Below are positions 1,099-52,742 of a DNA stretch of 64,000 nt, piece by piece. Positions within the stretch are counted from its first letter, which is position 1. The number at the start of each line of letters is the position of its first letter. Location: assembly GCF_006345805.1 (NCBI RefSeq), contig NC_043016.1, forward strand, positions 20,708,001 through 20,772,000, in the 5' to 3' direction. The translations under genes and the position numbers were made by a program. The DNA comes from Octopus sinensis. Its lineage: Eukaryota. The notes under the pieces were generated by a model. The model worked only from the letters and a program-made list of their open reading frames with translations. It did no database searches and was not told where the DNA came from.

Positions 1099-2431
<1,333 letters not shown>

Positions 2432-3132: not shown

Positions 3133-3314
3133 AATGCCAAGTCTATCTTTTATTATTATCTCAACTAACACTGCGGAATTCCTGAAGTAAATCCAGCGGA
3201 AATACACCCAACCGTGGATGACACCAGGTAGCCCAAACTAAGAACGTGCTTTACTCAACACACTAATTGACATATACCCATTAGTCCCAAAAATTACATA
3301 TATATGTATGTGCG

Positions 3315-3342
<28 letters not shown>

Positions 3343-3345
<3 letters not shown>

Positions 3346-4940
3346 TTTTTACTTGATCTGTCCCCCTCTCTCTCTCTCTTTTCTCTCTATTCATCTTCTC
3401 TTTCCTCTGATCCTTTGGTCTAGTCTTCCACTACCCTCCTATTTCTTTGTCTCGCTCTGCACTCACAGGTCATTCTTCGACACCCATCCCTTCTCCTCTC
3501 TGATTCCTTCTTTCTCTCTCTTCTCTCTCTTTGTTGCGTTTTGTTCCCCTTTCTCTCTCTCTCTCTTCCTTTGCTTCTCTTTCTTTTCTTTTCCCTCTTC
3601 TCTGTCACGTGACTGTTGGCCGAAATCTGCCTTTCAGCTCCTGACCCTCGTCGTGTTAACATCGTTGTTTTTCGTCCGCCGCTATAAAGGCTTTTTCCAA
3701 TGCGCCAGAGAAAAAATTGTTTGCTTGTTATCAGTCGTAAGACACTTGTTGTTTTCACCGTTAATGCTTCTGTATTTCATGTTTCTGTATTCCATTATTG
3801 TTTTTTGTTTTTTTTTTATATCTGTCCCTTTTGCTGTCCTGGTGTTCGTATGCATTCGATCCTTCTTCCAGGAAATCTACGCTTCCAGCTTAGTTTTTCT
3901 AATGCTCGTTGCTTAGTTTTTCTTGGAGGGCTGGCCGTGATCTAGTAATCTCAAGATTAATCAGCCGAAATTACTACGATGATCCGGTTCTTGACTGAAG
4001 ACTGAGGGGTTCGAATGTCCTGTCCATGTTTATTGTATCGTCTTCTAAGAGTTATACGTTCTTGTCCATGTTGTATTTTTCTACATACCTTAACATATAT
4101 TCCAGGCGCCCCGTACCCCCCTTATCATTAATGTGAACACATATTCTTAATAATTGGTACGACTCTCTGTTTGTCTCTCTCTCTCTCTCATTTTTACTTG
4201 ATCTGTCCCCCTCTCTCTCTCTCTTTTCTCTCTATTCATCTTCTCTTTCCTCTGATCCTTTGGTCTAGTCTTCCACTACCCTCCTATTTCTTTGTCTCGC
4301 TCTGCACTCACAGGTCATTCTTCGACACCCATCCCTTCTCCTCTCTGATTCCTTCTTTCTCTCTCTTCTCTCTCTTTGTTGCGTTTTGTTCCCCTTTCTC
4401 TCTCTCTCTCTTCCTTTGCTTCTCTTTCTTTTCTTTTCCCTCTTCTCTGTCACGTGACTGTTGGCCGAAATCTGCCTTTCAGCTCCTGACCCTCGTCGTG
4501 TTAACATCGTTGTTTTTCGTCCGCCGCTATAAAGGCTTTTTCCAATGCGCCAGAGAAAAAATTTGTTTGCTTGTTATCAGTCGTAAGACACTTGTTGTTT
4601 TCACCGTTAATGCTTCTGTATTTCATGTTTCTGTATTCCATTATTGTTTTTTTTTTTTTTTTTTATATCTGTCCCTTTTGCTGTCCTGGTGTTCGTATGC
4701 ATTCGATCCTTCTTCCAGGAAATCTACGCTTCCAGCTTAGTTTTTCTAATGCTCGTTGCTTAGTTTTTCTTGGAGGGCTGGCCGTGATCTAGTAATCTCA
4801 AGATTAATCAGCCGAAATTACTACGATGATCCGGTTCTTGACTGAAGACTGAGGGGTTCGAATGTCCTGTCCATGTTTATTGTATCGTCTTCTAAGAGTT
4901 ATACGTTCTTGTCCATGTTGTATTTTTCTACATACCTTAA
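3343..4940. repeat. Near-identical direct duplication, 3343-4093 and 4188-4940 (period ~845 bp), unclassified element
   Basis: Copies are near identical by eye and give duplicate ORFs (3308+ and 4171+). Confidence 0.92.
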
Positions 4941-7634: not shown

Positions 7635-8216
7635 TGTAGTGACCCTATAGCGGTGCGCGCTCGCGCACCGTCCATTTGTATTTCGCGCGTGTTGGTGCCT
7701 TTACCAAGGCACAGAAAGGAAGGGCCCTCTCGCGCATGCGCGAACCACCGGAAGCACGACCCTGGCCAAGGCAGGGGGATCATAGAACGTTTGACCACTA
7801 GCAGCAGTCATCGGGGACTTGGGACCCAGCGATTGAAGGCGGCGGTCACGATATATTTTCTCTCCGGTTGATAGCAGCAGTCGGCCGAATGCCTTTAACC
7901 AAATTGTTGCCGACCACATTCAACTTCCCTGTTCGACGCCATCTTGACCCCTTTCTGGTTTAGCGGCTGGACATTGTAAATATTACAATCTATTAACTTT
8001 CAGCCTTGCGCGCCCAGAATCAAGGACATCAGATAACACACTTATTGTTATTGTTACCAAGAAAGAGAATAAAGTAGTTATATATATTTCACGTCTGCGT
8101 CTTGTTGTTTCTGACTTGTAGAGAATCTGGATTATTAAAGCAACGGCTAGTGAGAGTGATAGCTTTGTGCACCCCAAAAGTGCACGAGGATATTCACACA
8201 CATAAGTTCGTTTCAC
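7635..8216. repeat. CpG-rich cassette, copy 2
   Basis: Matches 5513-6100; the duplicated ORFs in the track reflect this. Confidence 0.9.
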
Positions 8217-8599
8217 CTTTAATGTTTTAGACATTACCCTAGCAAGAACACTTACTCGAAATTCAGTATACTGTATTCTCATTGAATATATCTCTTGGTT
8301 TGCTATGTTGTGTGTGTGTGTGTGTGTGGCGTAGATTCTAATTATATCAGAAAATTATTGTGAAAAATATTTTTCCTCGGAGGATATTCGGAAAATTCAC
8401 ACAACTCGGCTATGTTTCCTCATAATTTCAGAAAAATAAGTATTTTTTTATGAAGTTTTCTCCAAATATATTTCAGATTATGAAGATTACGATTATATCA
8501 GAATTCAATATGAAAAGAAATTGGCAGGGTTCGCATACATACATACTGACATACACCACATATATCTACGAAATGAAATATGAAATTTTGATAAAAAAA

Positions 8600-9128
8600 T
8601 TGTGAAATTTGTGACTGTGTAATGCCCATTTCTGTCAAGGAAATATACATTGTTCTGGTGCAAGAGCTCCGAACTTTTGCGGCAAAATCTCTTCCTGAAC
8701 CCCTTCAAAACTTGTTGTCTGTCTGGCCAGTGAGAACTCAGTGGGGGTAAATAACGCCCTTGCTGTCGAAAAGGGGTACCAAGATGTGCTTCTCCGTAGG
8801 CTCACTTTGCTTGACTTCTTGTGCCATACAAGTTAATATATAAGCAATCTAAGTTTCTGTAGCATTTTTGCCCTGTTAAACAGAACTTTATTGCATAACG
8901 AGCTTCTAAATTGTCTTCTCGTCCCGACCACGTTCTGTAAAACTAGTCAACTGTGACAAGTAATGTTTAGTAGGCTATGTTCAAAGTGCTGTTACAGCCG
9001 TTTCCATCAATCTGGAATGGCAGATCAGCTTCTTATATAGTAATGATATTCTAAAATTACAATAATCTAGGAGGGTTATAATGGCCTCTCAAAAAAAAAG
9101 GCTCGCGACTTTTGGAACGCACATCGTA
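8600..9128 (-). mobile_element. Internally deleted mariner-like transposon remnant
   Basis: Minus-strand translations EDNLEARYAIKFC...GKNATET and FDSKGVIY...GFRKRFCRK...HQNN resemble mariner transposase. TIR-like TACGATGTGCGTTCCAAAAG at ~9128. Confidence 0.65.
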
Positions 9129-10227
9129 CCAGTATACATGGCGTACAAATAATGAATGCTGATGGTAATTATTCAGTCCTCCATCTAGAGCTAATCAAAG
9201 AACCTCAAAGATTCAATATCCCTTTGGACACTGCAATGTCATTCTCTGACTTGCAGACACACTTAGAAAGATTACACCACTCTTACCATCTTCATCACTT
9301 TCACTTAATTCATTCAGCATCCGTTTCTCCACTCCTAAGTGAAACTTGAAAAAGTCGACGTGGGTTTTACCAAAAACGAACATCTCTGGTGTCAAACATT
9401 TCGAACGTGTTCCATTATAGAATGTCTTTCGTTACAGACAGCATAGAAAGGAAAACTGCTTCTTCTCTTACTCATTTAAAGGGAAGTGATAGAGTAATCA
9501 ACATGGTAGACTCGACTGACGGTCCGTCCCGTCTCACACGCGAACAGTTGTTCGACACAACTCCACATGTCAGAAATACCAGGGAGTTGAATAAATGCGT
9601 ACAAGACGGTTTCATCTCAGATAAGCCGGTTTAACGGCACTTTCATGCCCGTAAAGTTTATCTCGTAAAGTTGAGCCCCTCGGTAGTAGTGCATGATCAA
9701 TGACTTCTGAATGTTATCGATAATGATCGCCAATCCAAAAGTTCTCCCAAACAAACTAAACTGCATTTTCGTTTGACACTCAGTTTCCTCGAAAACGTCA
9801 TCACTTTTTTTCCGCCATTAAACCTCTATAAACAACTACAATGGAACAGGCACCGATCCTGTTACCTCCCTTGTAGAGGACGATTAAAACATTTTAGCCT
9901 CCGAGCTCCTCATCTTGGTTTTTGCTCTTCCCTAACAGACTGCAGCTCCATTGAGGAGATGCTCAAAGGCGTGCCTCACAAACACGATCCAAAACCATTC
10001 ACCATCGACATTTTTTCTACTGAAGGTGCAACTTCAGCGCATGTCTGTGCATCAGCCATCAAGGCGTGCTTAAGCCGCCATGCAGAAAGTGTTGTCAGCT
10101 GATGAACCGCCCGTCTAGTGGAATGTGTCCTTCCCACAATAAGTTAATTAACAGACGCTAAAATTTGATTAGGTGATGGCTGGAGTAAGGCAGGAGAGTC
10201 AGGTGGTACACAATAACGAAAATGATA

Positions 10228-11220
10228 CAGGCATTCACCATCTTCCTTTCAGGGACAGATCTCTTTCGACCATACCCACCTCAGAACTGACTGTGTTTTC
10301 CCACACGGACTTCTTGCCGTTTCAGCAAAATGAACGCCGGCAAAGCGCCAGTCGGCATCATTTACGGTCCTGACTACGACGGTATCTGATCGCCTTCGAA
10401 TTTCTGACTTTCACTTTTGATCAATGTAAACTCGCTTGTCACTTGCCTTCAGTGCTGTGCGTCAGGTTGGTCAGACTCGCTCTGAGCAATCTAATTTTTT
10501 CACGGTAATTATACAAGCTGCTCGGACACTCGGTGAAAGAGAGCCCTCTGAAGAAGCTGAAACAACTATGAATTGGGTGCAAGACTGCAGGTCTCGAAAG
10601 AGTCCGGCGCCGTTATTTTTCGTTACTATCTCCCCGTACCACTCGTGGATAATTCACGCTGTTGTTGCCTTCGTTGGATATAGTCACCGTTTTGCTTTCT
10701 CCCTCTCTGGATTCAAACCCTAAATTCCCGTCACATATTTCCATCACTGTTGGCACATGTAAGTCGCTGAAAGTTTGACATTGCAGACTCACGAGGGCTC
10801 GTCGAGCGAAATCTACTCGATTCTAACTTGTACGCTCGTACTGACAGTTACCCAGTCACCAAAACTCGAAGGGTGTGACGCCGCCACGAGTCGCGAGTGC
10901 GACGACTGCTGTGGCGGCCCATCATTGTGAAAGTTAACCGCACTGTAGCACTTGTCCGCCGAACAGGCGCCGACGATGAGAGACCGAGGTGACTGTCGAA
11001 CCCCTTTTTTCGGCCCAATGCCCGAGTACGACCTGCGATCGCAGCTTTGGTTTCGTGTATTATCTCTAGAATTGCAAGTATTATTCAGCCTCCTAGTGGT
11101 GAGGAATACGGTCCTTCAGGAAAGGTCAAGTTCCTGAGCCATTTGCGATTTCACCATTCGTTCACAGCATGGTTTAAGCTTTGAGATAAGCATATGAGTA
11201 GTGTTAAGATCAACTAGAAA
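10228..11220 (-). pseudogene. 18S rRNA: Decayed 18S rRNA copy (5' and central domains) with internal deletions
   Basis: The minus strand shows colinear 18S motifs: CTAGTTGATC..CATATGCTTATCTCAAAG (5' end, 11220), AATTCTAGAGATAATAC, GGGAATTTAGGGTTTGAATCCAGAGAGGGAG, GACTCTTTCGAGAC, AAAAAATTAGA, GAAGGCGATCAGATACCGTCGTAGTC and GTATGGTCG. Confidence 0.9.
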
Positions 11221-12730
11221 TCAGTGGCGAGAGTGAGGATAACAGCGACACAGAGCAAAGGCAGAAGAGAAAAATGACAAGGGAAGAAAATGGTGGTTTC
11301 TCGGCAACAGCCCTTTTTTCCCTAATACCACAAACAGTGTGAGCGCATATTTGTTATCGCTCTTGTTGAAGATGAGGTGGGCTTAAACCACTGAAGAACC
11401 GCTTCTACCCGCGATAACATGAACCGATCAAACACTGACGACTGCGACTTGAAGATCTTGTGTTGATCGTTGAACGTTCGCGCGCACGTGGCCCCAACAA
11501 GCAAACAGTTGCCTATGAAAAATCGCCTGTTTGTTAGGGCTGTGAGGAACAGGCGGAAACGAGAGTTGGTCAAAACCGATAGCAACGCATGAAGCTACCT
11601 CAGATCTAAGTGTGCAACCGTTAAGTAAGCCGGGTCGAAAGTGAAACGAAGTGAAACGAAGTGACCGCGAAATCGGACGGAGTGTGCACCGTCTGTGATT
11701 GTGCCTCCGAAACTAGTTACACCGTACTCGTCCGCTGCTGCGTCGGTCTGCAGCCTGAGTGTAACAGGGAGCATGACGATTGGCGGGACTATTGTCGCCG
11801 GAGTGAAGCGGTATCACCGAATAACGAAGCAAAAAGTATCATGAACGCGAACAGGAACACGTTCATGATAATTTTCGCGACGGTGGTGCAGCGATACCCA
11901 TAAGTCCCACTAGTAATCCATTCTGGAAAGACAATGCTGCTCTCTTGCTTGTCAGCATAACACCGATGACGGATCTGAAAGTGATTGCTAATTCGTTCAC
12001 TGCGATGTAGCGACAAAGCATGAAGACAGTAATATACTCTAGCCGAGTCCACGACTGGAAAGAAAATAGCAAGTGCCTCCGCGATGGGAGAGGTGCAACG
12101 CACAGTGCACCCACTATGATTCAGCAGCATTCGGCGAGGACGTTGCGACATGCAACACTCTTCGCGGCCAAGGGTTTTTTTTCTGTACTTGTTTCAGTCA
12201 TTTGACTGCGGCCATGCTGGAGCACCGCCTTTTAGAGTGGTGAAAGAGTACAGCAGGGATCACCACCTCCTGCCGGAGCCTCGTGGAGCTTTTAGGTGTT
12301 TTCGCTCAATAAACACACACAACGCCCGGTCTGGGAATCGAAACCGCGATCCTCCGACCGCAAGTCCGCTGCCCTAACCACTAGGCCATTGCGCCTCCAT
12401 TGGCAAAGAACGAAGAAGAAGACACGAGTGAGATGCCGGGCGAGTGTTCTGTCGCTGCTAAGGAAAACAGCACGATGGTGACAGCGAACATGGGCACGAA
12501 ATGCCAGGAGGAAGTCGTTGTCGGAAGCTGGGCACGACGATTGAGGGAGCGACGGAATTCGGCGGCGAGTGTGAAACGGAGCCCAGGTTATGGGTGACTG
12601 TGACAGCAAGAGATATCAAACTTTCTTCTGATGCTACCGAACAGTGACCAACGAGGAAACGGAAACGGGCTGGCAAGTTTCCTGCTGCTGCTGAGCATAG
12701 GACGGGGGCGGAACAACTCTGATTACGAAT
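11221..12730 (-). other. Putative decayed rDNA 5' external transcribed spacer
   Basis: CpG-rich, non-coding, non-repetitive sequence directly upstream of the 18S 5' end. Inferred from position only. Confidence 0.45.
12174..12398 (-). mobile_element. SINE family C (tRNA-derived head)
   Basis: Minus strand GGAGGCGCAATGGCCTAGTGG (A box)...GGTTTCGATTCC (B box). Tail GCTCCAGCATGGCCGCAGTCAAATGACTGAAACAAGTA is shared with family B. Confidence 0.85.
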
Positions 12731-12789
12731 AAATCGCTCTCTCTCTCTCTCTCTCTCTATATATTATATATATATATATATATAATATA

Positions 12790-13293
12790 TATATATATAA
12801 AACTCTAGTTGTGTGAGTGTCTGTCCCCTTCGATTTAGATTCTTAACTCCTCCCACATTTTGCGGTGCAGTTTAACCAAATTCGGGTATCTTATAGTCGT
12901 GATTCATATCGAGCCCGTCTGGCTATTAGCGCGCGTCAACGATGAGTCTACGATTTTAAAAATAATTTAACATCATTTTTTATTCCATTTTAATGCATAA
13001 AATGCATCGTGTGTCGATGGCGGCGGAGTTGGCGTCCACGCTTACAGCTGCACCTGTTTGCTTCTCCCCTCTTTCCCTCCCTCGTGAAGCTGTGGGGAAG
13101 GAGTGTAAAGAAATCAACGTCGTAATGCGTTGTGAAGGAAACCAGCGTTCTTTTAGAACAACGACTTCATGGCTTGAAGACACCAAAATAAAAATGGCTA
13201 AGAAAGCCCGAATTTATAAGGGAAGTAACTCTCTAAAAATGCTTATATAGTTATTTCCCTTACAAACCCGAGCAACGCCGGCGATACTGCTAG
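12790..13293 (+). mobile_element. Non-autonomous Helitron family 1, copy 1
   Basis: Starts TATATAAAACT; ends with a hairpin-like CCCGAGCAACGCCGG then CTAG|T (13290-13293). Confidence 0.8.
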
Positions 13294-13806
13294 TATATAT
13301 ATAAAACTGTAGTTGTGTGAGTGTCTGTCTCCTACGATTAGATTCCTAACTCCTCCCACATTTTGCGGTGCAGTTTAACCAAATTCGGGTATCTTATAGT
13401 CGTGATTAATATCGAGCCCGTCTGAGTATTAGCGCGCGTCTACGATGAGTCTACGATTTTAAAAATAATTTAACATCATTTTTTATTCCATTTTAATGCA
13501 TATATTTCGTGTGTCGATGGCGGCGGAGTTGGCGTCCACGCTCAAACACACTGCACCTGTGTTTGCTTCTCCCCATTCTTCCCTCCCTCGTGAAGCTGTG
13601 GGGAAGGGAGTTTAAGGAAATCAACGTCGTAAAGCGTTGTCAAGGAGACCAGCGTTCTTTTAGAACAACGACTTCATGGCTTGAAGACACCAAAACAGAA
13701 ATGGCTAAGAAGCCCGAATTGGCATCTATAAAGGAAGTAACTCTCTAAAAATGCTTATATAGTTATTTCCCTTACAAACCCGAGCAACGCTGGGCGATAC
13801 TGCTAG
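13294..13806 (+). mobile_element. Non-autonomous Helitron family 1, copy 2 (head-to-tail with copy 1)
   Basis: Same sequence; ends CTAG|T at 13803-13806. Confidence 0.8.
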
Positions 13807-13817
13807 TATATATATAT

Positions 13818-13870
<53 letters not shown>

Positions 13871-27579: not shown

Positions 27580-28800
27580 CCCGTTAGTTGTTGGGGAATT
27601 GGTAGCATTAACAACCAGGTTTGAGAGATTTGTTGGAGAAATTGAGATTGCTCCCTCCCCCTCTCCTCACTTTCTTCTTTATATGATATTGAAAAGAACT
27701 GACTAGAGCTTGGCCCGATAGGAAAGTGCCTATCTTCAAACCTGTCAGACAGATCCACCAATTTCTTTCACCACAAACACTAAACAGAGACAGATCTGTC
27801 ACTAGTTTTTCTTGAATCACCGATAATGCTTCACCAGTTGGGACTTTGGTGAACAGACTTATCACATCTACACCCACCATCTGGTTGGATTCAATGGGGT
27901 TATCTTTGATCAATTCTGTGAAGTGAGTGGAATACTTCATGTATGATGACTTTCCTGCTAATGGATTGATTAAATCCACAAGGAAGTGGCTCAGTGGATG
28001 ACATGCAGAACCTCTACAGCTCACTATAGGTCTTAATGGAACACCATCCTTGTGAATATTAGGGATACCGTACATGTGTGGTGGTTTACTGTAGTGTTGA
28101 GTCAGTTATCTGTACTTCATTGGTGTAAAGTGATCCTTGTTCTTGATCAAGATCTGTGACAACTTCCTCTCTGTTTTCAAAGTAGGGGTCTTTCTTTTCT
28201 TTGCTGTAGCTACCATCACTTATAAGACTTGCCAATTTTTCAGAATATTCAGACTTGTTTATCACCAATGTAGCATTTCCCTTGTCCACTGGAAGTATTA
28301 TGATGGAATTGTCATTCTGTAGTCTTTGGATAGAGAACTTTTCTTCCTTAGTGATGTTTGTTTTGGGAAATTTTGCTTTTTCTAGTACCTGTCTCACTTT
28401 CCACCTTAGTTCATCTCCCTGAGCTTTTGGTATCTTTATGGCTATCTCTTCAATAGTCCCTATTGCAATGTGTTCAGCTTCCATTCCTGGGTCTCTGCCT
28501 ATTGCCTATGAAGTCTATCTAGGTCAACCGTACAGATCCCAAATTTGTGATCTTTGTACCGACCACTTGAAATTGAACAACCTATGCTAAGCTATCCCTG
28601 ACCTGCAGAAAACTCCATCTAAATATGGTCTAGATAATTTGCTGCAGTTTGTCCATGTCCTCATTGGCACACTCAGGGAATCCAGTTGGCACCTGTCAGG
28701 CAGTGGGAAATATCTGGGCTTGTTTGGGAGGCTTTTGCATCCCTACTCCTATTGGCTAGCCCCACACAGTTCAAACACAAATCTAAGATACCATTCCAAT
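27580..28800 (-). mobile_element. Penelope-like reverse transcriptase remnant
   Basis: IIILPVDKGNATLVI (DKG motif); YGIPNIHKDGVPLRPIVS; VGVDVISLFTKVP. Frameshifted. Confidence 0.88.
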
Positions 28801-31519: not shown

Positions 31520-33145
31520 TATGTTTGGAGATACAGGTAGGGGTAGGAGTCCATCAAGGAACAGCCCTCAGCCCCCTCTTATTCATCATAGTTCTCCAGG
31601 CAATAACAGAGGAATTCAAGACAAGTTGCCCCAGGAGCTCCTCTATGCTGATTTGCTCTCATAGCAGAATCACTACCAGAACTAGAGAAGAAATTTCAGG
31701 TGTGGAAGCAAAGTTCGGAATCGAAGGGCCTTAGAGTCAAGGTTGCAAAAATTAAAGTCCTAGTAAGTAGGAAGGCGAACACATCACACACCCCTTCAGG
31801 TAGATGGTCCTGCTCGATCTGTATGAAAGGTGTAGGTAGAAACTCCTTAAGATGTACACAGTGTAAGCTATGGATACATAAGAGGTGCAGCAACATCAAA
31901 GGAAGGTTAACCGAGATGATATTTTTTGTGTACAGCAGATGCACAGGGGCAATAAACACTGCAGATGTTCAGAAAATAGATTCCATCACATGCCAGGGGG
32001 AGAAACTAGAAGTAGTTGATAACTTCTGCTACCTAGTGGACCAAGTCTGTAGTAGAGGTGGATGCTCGGAGAGAGTTGCCATGAAAATAAAAATAGCCAG
32101 GGCAAAGTTCAGAAAGCTCCTACCTCTACTGGTGACAAATGGCTTCTCACTTAGCGTGAAAGGTAGATTGTATGATGCATGTGTGCGAACAGCCATGCTA
32201 CACGGCAGTGAAACATGGGCCGTGACTGCTGAAGACATGCGTAGGCTTGAAAGAAATGAAGCTAGTAATGTCAGTGCACACACTGTGTAATGTCAGTGTG
32301 CACACATGACAGAGTGTAAGCACCCTGAGAGAAATGTTGAACATAAGAAGCATCAGATGTGGTGTGCAACAGAGACAACTGTTGGTATGTTCATGTGCTG
32401 TGTATGGATGAGGAGAGCTTTGTGAAGAAGTGTCACTCCCTAACATTGGAAGGAACGCATGGAAGAAGGAGACCCAGGAAGACATGGGACGAGGTGGTGA
32501 AGTATGATCTTCAAACGTTGGGCCTCACAGAAGCAATGATAAAAGACCAAGACCTCTGGAGATATGCTGTGATTGAGAAGACCCAGCAAGTAATGTGAGA
32601 TCACAGCCATAGTCTATACCAGTGTTGCATAACCAGCCCATTTAAAGGGTACCTTTGAATCATCAGGCAACATGCCATGCTTGAAGAGACCTTTTGAATC
32701 AACAAAATTCAAAATCAAAATCAAAAATCAAATCACAATCAAATAGAAATTGTAGTTGTGGCTAATGCCAGTGTTGCCTGACTGGCTCTTGTGCTGGTGG
32801 CATGCAATAAGCATCATTCACATGTGGGTCGCTGCCAATGCATAAAAAGCACCATCCAAACGTGGTCAATGCCCCCCCCCCCCAACTGGATCCTGTGCCG
32901 GTAGCACATAAAAATGTACCATTTGAACGTGGCTATGCCAGTGCTGCTTGATTGGCTCAATGCCAGTGGCACGTGAAAAGCACCCACTACACTCTCGGAG
33001 TGGTTGGCATAAGGAAGGGCATCCAGCTGTAGAAACATTGTCAGATTAGATTGGAGTCTGGTGAGGCCTCCTAGCTTGCCAGTCCGCAGTCAAACCGTCC
33101 AACCCATGCCAGCATGGAAAACAGACGTTAAAAGATGACGATGAT
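31520..33145 (+). mobile_element. 5'-truncated RTE-clade LINE (RT C-terminal half with PHD finger, 3'UTR, GAT tail)
   Basis: VGVHQGTALSPLLFIIVL, ELLYAD, KIKVL, FCYL, MLHGSETW; 3' end TTAAAAGATGACGATGAT. Confidence 0.9.
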
Positions 33146-34173: not shown

Positions 34174-35945
34174 TTAACGTCTGTTGTCCATACTGGCGTG
34201 AGTTGGACGGTTTGATTGGGTTGGCACGCTGGAAGGCTGCACCAGACTCCAGTCCGACTTAGCATATGGCTGGAAGCCCTTCCTAATGCCAACCACTCTG
34301 TGAGTGTAATGGGTGCTTTTATGTGCCACTGGCATTGGTACCATTTGCATGACACCAGGGTGCATTTATGTGCTACCTGTACAGGTGCCAATTTGTGTGA
34401 CAATGGTATCTGCCACGACTGTGATTTTCCTTGGCTTGATGAGTCTTCTTCTCAAGCATGACCATAATGTAAAAGATCTTGGTCATTTCCTCCATGAGGC
34501 CCAACACTTGAAAGGGATTCGGCCACTTTTCCTCCGTGAGGTTCAATGCTCAAAAGGAACTCCGTCATCTTGCTGAGGTCCAACACTCAAAAGGAACTCA
34601 TCCACTTTGCCTCCATCAGGCCCAACGTTCAAAAGGAAATCAGTCACTTTGCCTCCGTGATGCCCAACGTTCAAAAGATTTTCTTTACATGCCACCAGTA
34701 CAGGTGCACTTGGCTTGATGGGCCCTCTCAAGTAGAGTACATCACCAAAAGTCTTGGTCATCAGTCATTGCCTCTGTGAGGCTCAAAGTTCAAAGATCAT
34801 GCTTCACTACCTCGTTCAATGTCTTCCTGGGTCTACCTCTACCACAGGTTCCCTCCACAGTTAGATATCAACACTTCTTTAAAAAGCTGTCCACATTCAT
34901 ACACATCAAATGACCATACTGGCAGTCATTTCTTTTGCACACCACATCTGATTCCTCTTATGCCTAACTTTTCTCTCAAGATGCTTACACTCTGTCAAAC
35001 ATGCACACTGACATTGTACATCCAGCAAAGAATACTGGCTTCATTTCTTTCAAGCCTATGCATGTCCTCAGCTGTCATAGCCCATGTTTCACTGCCATGC
35101 TGCATGGCTTTTTGCACACAGGCATCAAACAATCTGCTTTTCACTCTGAGAGAGAGGCCTTTTGTTGCCAGCAGGGGTAGGAGCTCTCTGAACATTATAC
35201 AGCCTAATCTTATTTTCAGAGCTACGCTCTTGGAGTATCCACCTCTACTACTAACTTGGTCACCTAGATAACGGAAGTTATCTACTACATCTAGCTTGCC
35301 CCCACACCGGTAGGAAGTTAAATGAGTCTATTTTCTACACATTTTCAACATTTATTGTACCTACGCACTTTCCACATACAAAAGTCAGTTTTCCTGTTAA
35401 ACTTCCTTTGATGTTGCTGCACCTTTTATGTGACCAAAGCTTACATTGGGTGCATCTTTTTTTTTTTTCTTGTTTCAGTCATTTGACTGCGGCCATGCTG
35501 GAGCACCGCCTTTAGTCAAGCAAATAGACACCGGGACTTATTCTTTGTAAGCCCAGTACTTATTCTATCGGTCTCTTTTGCCGAACCGCTAAGTGACGGG
35601 GACGTAAACACACCAGCATCGGTTGTCAAGCAATGCTAGGGGGACTAACACAGACACACAAACACACACACATACATATATATATACATATATACAACAG
35701 GCTTCTTTCAGTTTCTGTCTACCAAATCTACTCACAAGGCACTGGTTGGCCCGGGGCTATAGCAGAAGACACTTGCCCAAGATGCCACACAGTGGGACTG
35801 AACCCTGCACCATGTGGATGGTTAGCAAGCTACTTACCACACAGCCACTCCTGCACCTCTTATGGAGTTTCTACCTATACCTTTTCTACAGATTGAGCAA
35901 GGCCATCTACCTAAAGGGATTTGTGATTTGTCTGCCTTCCTACTT
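34138..35945 (-). mobile_element. RTE LINE (3' part), interrupted by SINE B
   Basis: (CAT)n tail at 34138; FRELLPLLATKGLSLRVKSRLFDAC...HGSETW; PHD RCTQCKLWSHKRC...FVCGKC. Confidence 0.88.
35461..35854 (-). mobile_element. SINE family B
   Basis: Reverse complement of the 19817 family; inserted within the RTE PHD-coding segment. Confidence 0.9.
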
Positions 35946-41053: not shown

Positions 41054-42312
41054 TCATCATCATCATCATCATCATCATCATTTAACATCCGCTTTCCATG
41101 CTAGCATGGGTTGGACGGTTCAACTGGGGTCTGGGGAGCCCGAAAGCTGCACCAGTCCAGTCAGATCTGGCAGTGTTTCTACAGCTGGATGCCCTTCCTA
41201 ACGCCAACCACTCCGAGAGTGTAGTGGGTGATTTTATGTGCCACCGACACAGGTGCCAGACGAGGCTGGCAAACGGCCACGCTCGGATGGTGTTTTTATG
41301 TGCCAACGACACAGGTGCCAGACGAGGCTGGCAGACGGCCACGCTCGGATGGTGTTTTTTTTTATGTGCCACCGACACAGGTGCCAGACGAGGCTGGCAG
41401 ACGGCCACGCTCGGATGGTGTTTTTATGTGCCACCGACACAGGTGCCAGACGAGGCTGGCAGACGGCCACGCTCGGATGGTGTTTTTATGTGCCACCGAC
41501 ACAGGTGCCAGATGAGGCTGGCAAATGGCCACGATCGGATGGTGCTTGTTACGTGCCCACAGCACGGAGGCCAGTCGATGCGGTACTGGCTACGGCCACG
41601 TTCGGATGGTTTTCTTATGTGCCACGTGCCACCGGCACTGGTACCACAAAGATACAAATTCCATTGATGTTCATCTATTTTGATTTGTTTAGATTTTCAC
41701 TTGCCTCAACAGGTCTTCACAAGTGTCACAAGAAGGAAGGTATGCACAGGTGGACTGACTACGTCCCAGGTAGGGGCCATGGGTTATGGCCTGACTAGTC
41801 TTGCCGGGTCTTCGGATGGTGTTTTTATGTGCCACCGACACAGGTGCTAGATGAGGCTGGCGAACGGCCACGATCGGATGGTGTTGTCATGTGCCCACCG
41901 CACTGACTACGGCACTGATGGATTTCTTGTGTTCCACAGGCACTGGTACCACAAGATACAAATTCCATTGATGTTCATCTATTTTGTCTATTTTGATTTG
42001 ATTTGATTTTCACTTGCCTCAACCGGTCTTCACAAGTGTCACAAGAAGGAAGGTATGCACAGGTGGACTGACTAGACTTGCCGGGTCTTCGGAAGGTGTT
42101 TTTATGTGCCACCGACACAGGTGCCAGATGAGGCTGGCGAACGGCCATGATCGGATGGTGTTTGTTACGTGCCCACAGCACGGAGGCCGGTCGATGCGGA
42201 ACTGGCTATGGCCACGTTCGGATGGTTCTCTTGTGTGCCACCGGCACTGGTACCACAAAGTGTGTGCCACCGGCACTGGTACTACAAAGATACAGATTCC
42301 ATTGATGTTCAT
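41054..42312 (-). mobile_element. RTE 3'UTR with a 62-bp minisatellite and rearranged modules
   Basis: (CAT)n tail at ~41054; units start at 41236, 41298, 41364, 41426 and 41488, with extra copies near 41826 and 42102. Confidence 0.85.
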
Positions 42313-49750: not shown

Positions 49751-51108
49751 TATTCTTTTTTAAGATAGCCATTGAAAAAATTTTTTCATCCCATTCACCT
49801 TCACATTCCAAGAATTTGGCAACAAGCTACTCATCTGCCTCACATTCAAGGGCACATGCACTATGTTGGCACCATTTAATTTTCAATACAAATGCTCATC
49901 ACTGAAACAAGCTATGATTTTTTAAGTCTCCATCTCCTCCTCCTCCTCCTTCATAGCAGCAGCAGCAGCAGAAGTAGAAGAAGAAGAAGAAGAAGAAGAA
50001 GAAGAAGAAGAAGAAGAAGGAGGAGGAGGAGGGGGAGGGGGAGGGGGTGGAGGAGGGGGGCGACAACGACTCCTTCTCCTCCACCACCACCTCCCCTCCC
50101 CCTCTTCTTCTTCTTCTTCTCAACCATTCAAGGACATCTTTTTTCAGCTAATTCCTGGGTGGGGCTGACCACCCTGTACATAAGCTCATCCCAGCACCTG
50201 TCCATCTGAAGGTCCAGACTGAACCAGATCCCATCTGTTTAGAGACCTACAACACTGCTGGAACATAGACTCACCTCTCCAGATGTCAAGCTGCAAGCTC
50301 ACCAACTTTCTTTTCTTTCTTGACTACAAGGGTGTATGGATACAAAACAAAAATGTATTATACAAAAGTATAAAATATGTGAGAATGTAAAGGGGAGCAA
50401 AATATAGCGCAATATATTGTGACATGTTGAAAATTTAGGGAAATTGAACACACAGCAACAAACAGATTCTAATACAAGATAATGTCTGTAAACTTTATGT
50501 CAAACATGCAACCTACATGCTTGCTCTGCAGGAACAAAGATTTCTGAAATTTGCCCACAGACTCTTGAGTGAAAATCCTCCAGAACAGAGTGTTCACATA
50601 CTCTACCAAAGCTTAGAAATCCCCGAGAATATCTTTGCTCTTCCCCACCACTAAGTCTCTATATATTTTAAGGTTTGATGGACCCCCAATTGCATCAGCA
50701 TAAAGAACTGTGAGAGCCTGACAACATTCCAGATGCCAGGCACCCAGTCTTAGTGTTCACTTGATTCAGGATGGGATACTCTATCAGAACAGATGAGTTG
50801 AGGGCAAACATGCCTCAAAAACAATGACCTCAATCATTTACAAATCAGAAATCTCTGCAGATAAAGCAACCATGGCATATCAAACCTTTCATGAACAAGA
50901 GAGAAGGTGAGAAGAAAATTAAAAAATATTTTTGTTGTTTTTGTAAAATCTCAGAAGGCAGGCAAGAGAGGCAGCAGATGGAGATTTAGCGGGTACAAAA
51001 TAGCTGAAGGCCCAGATGTAAATATAGTAGAGAATAAGAGCAGGGACAATGTTAGGATGAAAGTAACGGAGGAAAAAGAAGAGTGGGTAGAAAAAGAGAA
51101 AGAGATAT

Positions 51109-51470: not shown

Positions 51471-51697
51471 GTCAGGAATTACTGTCAAAAAGGAGGTGCA
51501 AAGTCAAGGGAAAATATTACCTTACCTGGAAGCATGAAGGTTGGTAAGAGGAAGGGTATACGACTATTGATAATGTTCCTCAACAGATTCTGGCTGACAC
51601 ATGCTAGCTTGGAAAAATAGACATTAAAACGATGATGATGATGATGATGATGATGATGACAAAGACAACATACACATTACATATGCACACATGCACA

Positions 51698-52212
51698 TCT
51701 ATATATATAAAACTGTAGTTGTGTGAGTGTCTGTCCCCTTCGATTTAGATTCCTAACTCCTCCCACATTTTGCGGTGCAGTTTAACCAAATTCGGGTATC
51801 TTATAGTCGTGATTAATATCGAGCCCGTCTGGCTATTAGCGCGCGTCTACGATGAGTCTACGATTTTTAAAATAATTTAACATCATTTTTTATTCCATTT
51901 TAATGCATAATTTTTCGTGTGTCGATGGCAGCGGAGTTGGCGTCCATGGTCACACCTGCACCTGTGTTTGCTTCTCCCCATTCTTCCCTCCCTCGTGAAG
52001 CTGTGGGGAAGGGAGTGTAAGGAAATCAACGTCGTAAAGCATTTTCAAGGAGACCAACGTTCTTTTAGAACAACAACTTCATGGCTTGAAGACACCAAAA
52101 CAGAAAAGGCTAAGAAAGCCCGAATTGGCATCTATAAGGGAAGTAACTCTCTAAAAATGCTTATATAGTTATTTCCCTTACAAACCCGAGCAACGCCGGG
52201 TGATACTGCTAG
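51698..52212 (+). mobile_element. Non-autonomous Helitron family 1, copy 3
   Basis: A|TCTATATATATAAAAC ... CCCGAGCAACGCCGGG ... CTAG|T. Confidence 0.85.
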
Positions 52213-52742
52213 TATATACATATAAATAAATGTGCATATAACACACACATACACAAAACATGGAGAATTGATGTTAATGTCACAATGTAATTTACTTAAA
52301 TTACTGTTAAGCTTCTGGACAAACAATAAGCAGGGGAGACTAAATAACCTACATGATAGCTTTCTTGAAATGCTTCTGTAGATTTCTGTTTTAAACGGCA
52401 GATTATGGTTCTGTAAAAAATGTAAAAGAAATAATTCAAAAATTGCATCCCATGTCTCTGTTTAACCCTAAACCTGAACATTCTGAACAGTCTCATCTAC
52501 TTATCTCTTATTCAAGTGATGGTATACCATGTGGGTGTATTTGTTTGAAATTTACTCCTGGATTGTCTTTACACTTGGACTACTTTTCCAAACTTCTACT
52601 AGTGCTTTATGGCAAATGTGCTTTGTTCAAAGCATAGTCTTAGCTCCTTTCATTATTTATAATGGGTTAAATCTAAAAAGAAATGAAAATTGTATTATCG
52701 GATGCGAAACTGAATACATTTTTTGGGGGGAAAGGAGACATC

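What the first reader, a model, noticed from the sequence alone, without database searches (positions are those of the whole stretch)
10228..11220. Orphan, heavily decayed 18S rDNA copy lacking functional-centre helices
About 1 kb is colinear with 18S, but the universally conserved GTGCCAGCAGCCGCGGTAA (h18, 530 loop) region is deleted near 10570-10580, and a further central block is missing near 10465-10475. Many changes are CG>TG/CA (AACGATGCC>AATGATGCC; AACGAAAG>AGTGAAAG), and the helices I checked are not compensated, which argues for an old pseudogene outside the homogenised array. The alternative is an ancient insertion of rDNA from a symbiont or parasite.
Basis: partly seen in the sequence, partly recalled or inferred. 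Interest (0 to 1): 0.7.

Follow-up and report, generated by a model that had tools for sequence, protein, structure and literature searches.

The report
Dead partial 18S ribosomal gene copy
This is a solitary, broken and heavily mutated copy of the first two-thirds of an animal 18S ribosomal RNA gene, drifting as junk DNA in what is probably an octopus genome; it is an ordinary kind of pseudogene.

Summary
Window 10243-11220, on the minus strand, is homologous to eukaryotic 18S rRNA (Rfam RF01960, 115.9 bits, E 1.3e-30). A profile built from 33 real 18S sequences gives three colinear hits (E 5e-45, 5e-6, 1e-29).

The copy covers only 18S positions 1 to about 1160. The whole 3' third is absent. 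About 208 positions that include helix 18 (the 530 loop) and V4 are replaced by 39 unrecognisable bases. About 143 central positions are replaced by 8 bases. The V2 region carries roughly 100 extra bases.

At 408 covered sites that are invariant in all 33 references, 28% are substituted. Only 70% of the 160 base pairs still present on both sides are canonical, against 96-100% in real genes. Independent neutral decay predicts 68 ± 4%. The substitutions are AT-biased, as in the surrounding genome.

No 5.8S, 28S or second rDNA piece lies anywhere in the 64 kb. The pseudogene reading is supported.

The CpG-decay argument is not supported (14/42 against 50/247, p = 0.07; local CpG o/e about 1.1). 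I could not determine the source lineage, host or foreign, because no cephalopod or parasite 18S was available. Rate: an ordinary rDNA pseudogene, low interest.

The parts
11040..11220 (-). Block A: the 5' end of 18S, from mature nucleotide 1 to about position 190. The start TTTCTAGTTGATCTTAACACTACTCATATGCTT corresponds to TACCTGGTTGATCCTGCCAGTAGTCATATGCTT.
   Evidence: Rfam alignment; blastn and nhmmer blocks; 82% identity at 90 reference-invariant columns.
10805..11039 (-). V2 region (helices 10-11), poorly alignable. It holds most of the extra sequence relative to the 33 references (insertions 11011-10997 and 10914-10904; the third, 10863-10789, runs about 15 nt into block B). It is GC- and CpG-rich and contains the hairpin GCCGCCAC...GTGGCGGC.
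   Evidence: MAFFT alignment. Whether the extra bases are a source-lineage expansion segment or later insertions was not resolved.
10590..10804 (-). Block B: 18S positions of about 306-520 (helices 12-17 region).
   Evidence: blastn at 69-70% identity, E about 1e-25; nhmmer; 70% identity at 111 invariant columns.
10551..10589 (-). A 39-nt stub standing in for about 208 profile positions (513-720). These include helix 18 (the 530 loop, GTGCCAGCAGCCGCGGTAA), helices 19-21 and most of V4.
   Evidence: Gap between nhmmer hits; no significant local similarity of the stub to that interval.
10474..10550 (-). Block C: the end of V4 and the GAAAAAATTAGAGTGCTCAAAGC region (profile 721-795).
   Evidence: nhmmer E 5e-6; blastn at 73% identity; Rfam local alignment.
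10466..10473 (-). Junction of the second large deletion. About 143 profile positions (796-938) are replaced by 8 nt. The missing part includes the AGAGGTGAAATTCTTGGA motif (690-loop equivalent by E. coli numbering; that assignment is from general knowledge).
   Evidence: Rfam shows 175 model positions against 38 nt.
10243..10465 (-). Block D: the end of the central domain (profile 939-1159). It includes GATCAGATACCGTCGTAGT and runs to AAAGGAA..., where homology stops. This is the 3' truncation point.
   Evidence: nhmmer E 1.4e-29; Rfam local alignment at 76.5 bits; 78% identity at 107 invariant columns.
11221..12170 (-). Upstream flank in the orientation of the 18S. It is unique in the window and has a similar composition (49.6% GC, CpG o/e about 1.0-1.3). 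It may be decayed 5' external transcribed spacer. Unassigned.
   Evidence: Composition; no repeats; no Rfam or Pfam hits. The ETS assignment is inference only.
9250..10242 (-). Downstream flank. It is unique, 43% GC, and has no detectable 18S 3'-domain, ITS, 5.8S or 28S similarity. Unassigned.
   Evidence: no hits; no protein domains.

Best explanation
The feature is a solitary, non-functional fragment of nuclear 18S rDNA, that is, an rDNA pseudogene or 'orphon' remnant. A piece of an rDNA unit holding the 5' and central domains of 18S (positions 1 to about 1160) came to lie outside the homogenised array. The source was most probably the host animal's own rDNA, and the piece possibly arrived with upstream spacer.

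Freed from concerted evolution and from selection, the copy accumulated about 0.27-0.35 substitutions per site with the host's AT-biased mutation spectrum. It also acquired two large internal deletions (helix 18 plus V4, and the helix 22-23 region) and extra sequence in V2. It cannot make a small-subunit rRNA and does nothing as one.

Shown: the homology, extent, lesions, loss of pairing, mutation spectrum and isolation from other rDNA. Inferred: host origin, a DNA-level mode of dispersal, and an age of probably tens to a few hundred million years, depending on an unknown neutral rate.
For: Homology: Rfam RF01960 at 115.9 bits, E 1.3e-30; three colinear nhmmer hits with a profile of 33 real 18S sequences; four colinear blastn blocks at 64-73% identity.

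Incompleteness: no 3' domain is detectable. About 208 and about 143 profile positions are collapsed to 39 and 8 nt.

Decay: of 533 reference-invariant columns, 125 are deleted and 113 of the 408 covered ones are substituted (72.3% identity). Real 18S sequences are 91-100% identical to the consensus at comparable (at least 90% conserved) columns.

No structural constraint: of 252 well-supported pairs, 92 have lost one or both sides. Of the 160 left, 70% are canonical, against 96-100% in references and 67.8 ± 3.7% expected from independent decay.

Mutation spectrum: GC>AT at 30% against AT>GC at 14% implies an equilibrium GC of 0.32, close to the AT-rich window background of 0.39.

Isolation: no other rRNA hit at E<=1 in 64 kb. 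Whole rDNA loci used as queries hit only 10242-11239.

Other points: there are no Ns, and the copy is embedded in unique sequence between host repeats. No protein domain occurs in any frame. Degraded rDNA dispersed away from arrays is a documented process (PMC5381670).
Against: The host's own 18S and spacers were not available. Host origin, the nature of the V2 extra sequence and the identity of the flanks are therefore untested.

The branch is so long that no affinity to any reference group is resolved.

The copy still has about 48% GC and a CpG o/e of about 1.1. This is unusual for very old neutral DNA in a methylated genome. It is explained here by its position in a part of the window (1-24 kb) that is not CpG-depleted.

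Copy number in the genome and conservation in related species could not be checked.
Confidence: 0.85

Rival explanations
1. Foreign origin. The fragment comes from the rDNA of a parasite, symbiont or prey organism. For a cephalopod host these could be dicyemids or apicomplexans. It was integrated long ago, or carries divergence inherited from a fast-evolving source, and has decayed since.
For: The copy is a very long branch with no clear affinity to any of the 24 reference clusters. Published cephalopod-specific V2-flanking primer sequences (PMC8074623) are not recognisable at the homologous positions.
Against: 28% substitution at universally invariant sites and pairing at the neutral expectation show in-situ decay whatever the source was. 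No unusual source is therefore needed to explain the divergence.

Residual motifs such as TAAATGATGCC (from TAAACGATGCC) and GCCGGCGTT match animal-type 18S in the references. The taxonomic meaning of these motifs is from memory only.

The host's own array is by far the most abundant source. The primer sites lie in the most decayed part, so their absence says little.
Confidence: 0.05
2. RNA-mediated origin. This would be a reverse-transcribed copy of 18S rRNA, for example made by template switching of a retrotransposon reverse transcriptase. That would explain a copy starting exactly at mature nucleotide 1 and ending at a domain boundary. It concerns the mode of origin only. The copy would still be a dead pseudogene.
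For: Detectable homology begins at mature 18S nucleotide 1 (11220). The window is rich in reverse-transcriptase-bearing elements.
Against: No poly(A) tract, target-site duplication or LINE 3' end adjoins the copy, and no protein domain lies in the flanks. Spacer sequence is not conserved between taxa, so homology stopping at nucleotide 1 is expected for a DNA-level copy too. The flanks share the element's GC-rich composition, which fits a longer DNA fragment better.
Confidence: 0.08
3. The sequence is functional: a divergent specialised rRNA gene, or an exapted non-coding RNA or regulatory element derived from 18S.
For: It has persisted in recognisable form and lies in a GC- and CpG-rich patch.
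Against: It lacks the 530 loop, the 690-loop region and the entire 3' major and minor domains, including the decoding centre. Base pairing is at the neutral expectation. No promoter, transcript or conservation evidence is available.
Confidence: 0.02

Closest known systems
Dispersed, degraded rDNA pseudogenes or 'rDNA-like' junk DNA away from rDNA arrays (human genome; Robicheau et al. 2017, PMC5381670)
   Same: rDNA-derived sequence displaced from the homogenised array, no longer under concerted evolution, degrading towards random sequence and pseudogenic.
   Different: Here only about 1 kb of 18S (5' plus central domains) is recognisable, with no 28S or IGS. The organism is a probable octopod. 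Chromosomal position (for example centromere-proximal) and copy number are unknown.
Functional eukaryotic 18S rRNA gene (Rfam RF01960) within a tandem 18S-5.8S-28S unit
   Same: Clear sequence homology and colinearity over positions 1 to about 1160.
   Different: It lacks helix 18 (the 530 loop), V4, the helix 22-23 region and everything 3' of about 1160. It is 28% substituted at invariant sites and only 70% of its pairs are canonical. There is no linked 5.8S or 28S.
rRNA pseudogenes escaping concerted evolution in fungi (PMC5555474; abstract only, seen)
   Same: rRNA gene copies that have escaped homogenisation and carry disabling changes.
   Different: Different kingdom. I saw no evidence here for a directed mutational process: CpG or RIP-like bias is not significant.
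rRNA-derived SINEs (for example PMC4994717; title and abstract only, seen)
   Same: Genomic elements derived from ribosomal RNA sequence.
   Different: There is no second copy in the window and no SINE architecture, tail or target-site duplication. The length and extent fit a gene fragment.

Membership tests
Eukaryotic SSU rRNA (Rfam RF01960): sequence homologue | Covariance-model score above the curated gathering threshold (50 bits) | tested here: met
   115.9 bits, E 1.3e-30; 76.5 bits for the central part alone.
Functional 18S rRNA gene | Full length, with all four domains (helices 1-45) including the 3' major and minor domains and the decoding centre | tested here: not met
   Homology ends at profile position about 1159 of 1816. 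Nothing further was found by Rfam, nhmmer or blastn.
Functional 18S rRNA gene | Universally conserved helix 18 (530 loop, GTGCCAGCAGCCGCGGTAA) | tested here: not met
   Profile positions 513-720 are replaced by 39 nt with no significant similarity.
Functional 18S rRNA gene | Near-invariance at universally conserved sites and maintained base pairing | tested here: not met
   72.3% identity at 408 invariant columns. 70% of pairs are canonical, against 96-100% in references, which equals the neutral expectation.
Functional 18S rRNA gene | Linkage to 5.8S and 28S in an rDNA unit | tested here: not met
   No other rRNA hit in 64 kb.
rDNA pseudogene / orphon | rRNA-gene homology combined with disabling lesions | tested here: met
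rDNA pseudogene / orphon | Location outside a tandem rDNA array | tested here: met
   It is a single copy in the window, flanked by unique sequence and host repeats, with no other rDNA within 64 kb. Its distance to the nearest array is unknown.
rDNA pseudogene / orphon | Neutral evolution (no constraint on structure; host-like mutation spectrum) | tested here: met
   Pairing is 70% against 67.8 ± 3.7% expected. The AT-biased spectrum implies an equilibrium GC of 0.32.
rDNA pseudogene / orphon | Derivation from the host's own rDNA | not testable with these tools
   No cephalopod 18S or ETS was obtainable. The NJ placement is uninformative and the cephalopod primer sites are not recognisable.
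Processed (retro-copied) pseudogene | 3' poly(A) tract and flanking target-site duplications | tested here: inconclusive
   None found. At this level of decay they could have been erased.
Horizontally acquired rDNA | Robust phylogenetic nesting within a non-host clade | tested here: inconclusive
   Long unplaced branch. Identity to all 33 references is 60-64%, with differences of a few percent at most. No parasite or host references were available.

The most novel reading that the evidence does not exclude
The fragment is not from the host's own array. It would be an ancient integration of rDNA from a cephalopod parasite or symbiont (for example a dicyemid or an apicomplexan), that is, a fossil of horizontal transfer into an octopod genome.
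Probability: 0.04. Interest if true: 0.55.

Novelty: new member of a known kind. Interest (0 to 1): 0.12.

Why it matters
It matters little in itself. It is one more example of rDNA escaping concerted evolution and decaying into junk DNA.

It has some practical value. Such copies can confuse rRNA annotation, 18S barcoding or PCR, and contamination screens. Rfam reports this one as a 'full-length' 1-1831 match although a third of the gene is missing.

If orthologues exist in other octopods, it could serve as a neutral marker for dating and for estimating the local mutation spectrum in an unmethylated compartment.

Tried and rejected
(1) By eye, 18S similarity seemed to continue downstream of 10243 (TTAATT..GGACAC, GCATGGC..). 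Rfam at E<=10, nhmmer --max and blastn at E<=50 find nothing, so I rejected this.

(2) MAFFT placed the 39-nt stub on the 530 loop. A shuffle test shows no significant similarity, so this is an alignment artefact.

(3) I tried to find the source contig or orthologues through ORFs overlapping or next to the element. They are not on record.

(4) I tried to pull related 18S-derived spurious ORFs, with organism names, using the element's translation. There were no candidates. I left the third protein search unused because its chance of success was low.

(5) A viral-contig scan for an 18S motif gave nothing.

(6) Published cephalopod-specific V2 primer sequences were tested as a host signature. They are not recognisable at the homologous sites, and none of the 103 fetched loci is cephalopod-like. 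Uninformative.

(7) NJ placement gave a long branch with no affinity.

(8) Six-frame Pfam on 8200-12300 gave no domains. My by-eye 'mariner' reading at about 8600-9000 is therefore unconfirmed.

(9) A search for direct or inverted repeats, target-site duplications or a poly(A) tract around the element found nothing convincing. The 18-nt direct repeat 9996-10013 / 10232-10249 does not bracket resumed 18S homology.

(10) CpG-decay hypothesis: not significant.

(11) ADAR-like A>G excess on the sense strand: 14/126 against T>C 6/90. This is small and I did not pursue it.

Full report
**What is there.** The only Rfam match at gathering level in the 64-kb window is SSU_rRNA_eukarya on the minus strand at 10254-11220 (115.9 bits, E 1.3e-30). 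Rfam reports it as model positions 1-1831. A local search of the lower part shows that the real alignment reaches only model position about 1116 at 10282. Nothing SSU-like is found in 9200-10300 even at E<=10.

To get real comparison sequences I scanned public metagenome contigs for a bilaterian-type 18S motif. This gave 103 loci. From them I extracted 63 full-length 18S genes, which are 33 distinct sequences in 24 clusters at 98% identity.

A profile of the 33 sequences, searched with nhmmer over the whole window, gives three colinear minus-strand hits:
- hmm 6-512 to 11218-10590 (E 5e-45)
- hmm 721-795 to 10550-10474 (E 5e-6)
- hmm 939-1159 to 10465-10243 (E 1.4e-29)

There was no other meaningful hit (a single E 8.5 match at 13704-13740 is noise). 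blastn gives the same four blocks at 64-73% identity to every reference. The true extent is 10243-11220.

**Anatomy.** Homology starts at mature 18S nucleotide 1 (11220) and ends at AAAGGAA..., the boundary between the central and 3' major domains.
- About 657 profile positions, the whole 3' major and minor domains, are missing. Rfam, nhmmer --max and permissive blastn find no trace downstream.
- Profile positions 513-720 hold helix 18 (the 530 loop), helices 19-21 and most of V4. They are represented by 39 nt (10551-10589). MAFFT laid these on the 530 loop, but a shuffle test shows no significant similarity to any part of that interval.
- Profile positions 796-938 are replaced by 8 nt at 10466-10473. 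This part includes AGAGGTGAAATTCTTGGA, the 690-loop equivalent by general knowledge.
- The V2 region carries about 100 extra bases, GC- and CpG-rich, relative to all references.

**Decay.** There are 533 alignment columns in the covered part that are invariant in all 33 references.
- 125 of them are deleted in the element. Of the 408 covered, 295 (72.3%) are identical.
- Within the four well-aligned blocks the figure is 70-82%.
- Real 18S genes are 91-100% identical to the consensus at comparable (at least 90% conserved) columns.
- The Jukes-Cantor distance is about 0.27-0.35 substitutions per site. With an unknown neutral rate this suggests tens to a few hundred million years. That age is inference.

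**Structure.** I derived a consensus structure for the first ~1,180 reference positions (the part the copy covers) from the references with RNAalifold. It has 252 pairs that are canonical in at least 90% of references.
- In the element, 26 pairs have lost both sides and 66 have lost one side.
- Of the 160 remaining pairs, 112 (70%) are canonical, against 96-100% in references.
- Random pairing would give 42%. Independent decay using the element's own substitution matrix would give 67.8 ± 3.7%.

Pairing is therefore exactly what unconstrained decay predicts, and there is no sign of compensation.

**Mutation spectrum.** The transition-to-transversion ratio is 1.17. GC>AT occurs at 30% of G/C sites and AT>GC at 14% of A/T sites. 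This implies an equilibrium GC of about 0.32, close to the AT-rich background (window GC 0.39).

However, CpG transitions (14/42) are not significantly more frequent than non-CpG C/G transitions (50/247; p = 0.07), and the element's CpG o/e is 1.08. The reason seems to be regional. CpG o/e is about 0.7-1.1 across 1-24 kb of the window and 0.1-0.5 across 26-64 kb. The copy therefore lies in a compartment that shows no methylation-type CpG loss.

**Context.**
- The window looks like an animal nuclear genome rich in retroelements and microsatellites.
- A reverse-transcriptase-related ORF has its highest-identity named match (77%) in Octopus bimaculoides. The host is therefore probably an octopod. 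This is a lead, not proof.
- There are no Ns in the window.
- The stretch of about 8220-12170 is unique within the window and bordered by host repeats.
- No 5.8S, 28S or other rRNA signal exists anywhere in the 64 kb at E<=1. Fifteen whole rDNA loci used as nhmmer queries hit only 10242-11239.
- No protein domain is found in any of the six frames of 8200-12300.
- The flanks 11221-12170 (49.6% GC) and 9250-10242 (43% GC) share the element's raised GC. The inserted piece may therefore have been longer, for example with 5' ETS upstream. Spacers are not conserved between taxa, so this could not be tested.

**Origin.**
- A neighbour-joining tree puts the element on a very long branch with no clear affinity. 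Its identity to all references is 60-64%.
- No cephalopod, dicyemid or apicomplexan 18S could be obtained. Published cephalopod V2-flanking primer sequences (PMC8074623) are not recognisable at the homologous, heavily decayed positions.
- Host versus foreign origin is therefore unresolved by data. Host origin is favoured on priors, and because the divergence is fully explained by in-situ decay.
- No poly(A) tract, target-site duplication or LINE tail supports an RNA-mediated origin. Such marks could have eroded.

**Comparison with what is known.** Degraded rDNA displaced from arrays and decaying towards random sequence is documented, for example in the human genome (PMC5381670). rRNA pseudogenes are reported widely. 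This locus passes the homology test for RF01960. It fails every test for a functional 18S gene: length, 530 loop, conserved sites, pairing and linkage. It meets the testable criteria for an rDNA pseudogene.

**Verdict.** This is an ordinary, old, partial 18S pseudogene.

Noticed in passing
window 1-24000 versus 26000-64000: CpG observed/expected is bimodal. It is about 0.7-1.1 in the first 24 kb and 0.1-0.5 in the rest, with TG+CA excess in the depleted part. This looks like a boundary between an unmethylated and a germline-methylated compartment, possibly a gene body.
   Followed up: partly
window 49928-50120: A purine microsatellite (GAA/GAG/GGGGA)n is followed by its pyrimidine mirror (CTC/CTT)n. 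Together they form a long hairpin that draws dozens of sub-threshold miRNA-family hits on both strands. This is a low-complexity artefact, not a miRNA.
   Followed up: yes
window 12787-13306, 13294-13818 and 51697-52225: A repeat of about 520 bp is present as two tandem copies next to the GC-rich block and as a third copy 38 kb away, at 92-95% identity. It is flanked by (TA)n, (CT)n and (AG)n microsatellites. The family was not identified.
   Followed up: no
window 1250-2134 (+): ORF of 294 aa that is the C-terminal part of a non-LTR-retrotransposon-type protein. It has hundreds of hits across cnidarians, echinoderms and crustaceans at about 50-58% identity, and 77% identity to an Octopus bimaculoides protein. 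This is the basis for guessing an octopod host.
   Followed up: partly
window 3308-3916 and 4171-4740 (+): Two ORFs with nearly identical low-complexity translations about 860 bp apart, indicating a local tandem duplication.
   Followed up: no
window 27608-28484 (-) and 31700-32290 (+): ORFs that look by eye like fragments of retroelement polymerases. They were not checked against any family library.
   Followed up: no
window ~8600-9000 (-): Translation fragments resembling a mariner-type transposase N-terminus by eye. Pfam found no domain at E<=0.1, so this is unconfirmed.
   Followed up: partly
window 12176-12235: A 50-60-nt motif recurs at 35457, 39585, 51137, 49299, 20271 and 25847 at 88-100% identity (80% for the 25847 copy). 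It is probably the core of a short interspersed repeat, and it marks the upstream edge of the unique block that holds the pseudogene.
   Followed up: no
window 41098-41798 (+): Overlapping ORFs with internally repeated peptide motifs (…HRHRCQTRLANGHARMVF…) point to a tandem repeat of about 100 bp.
   Followed up: no
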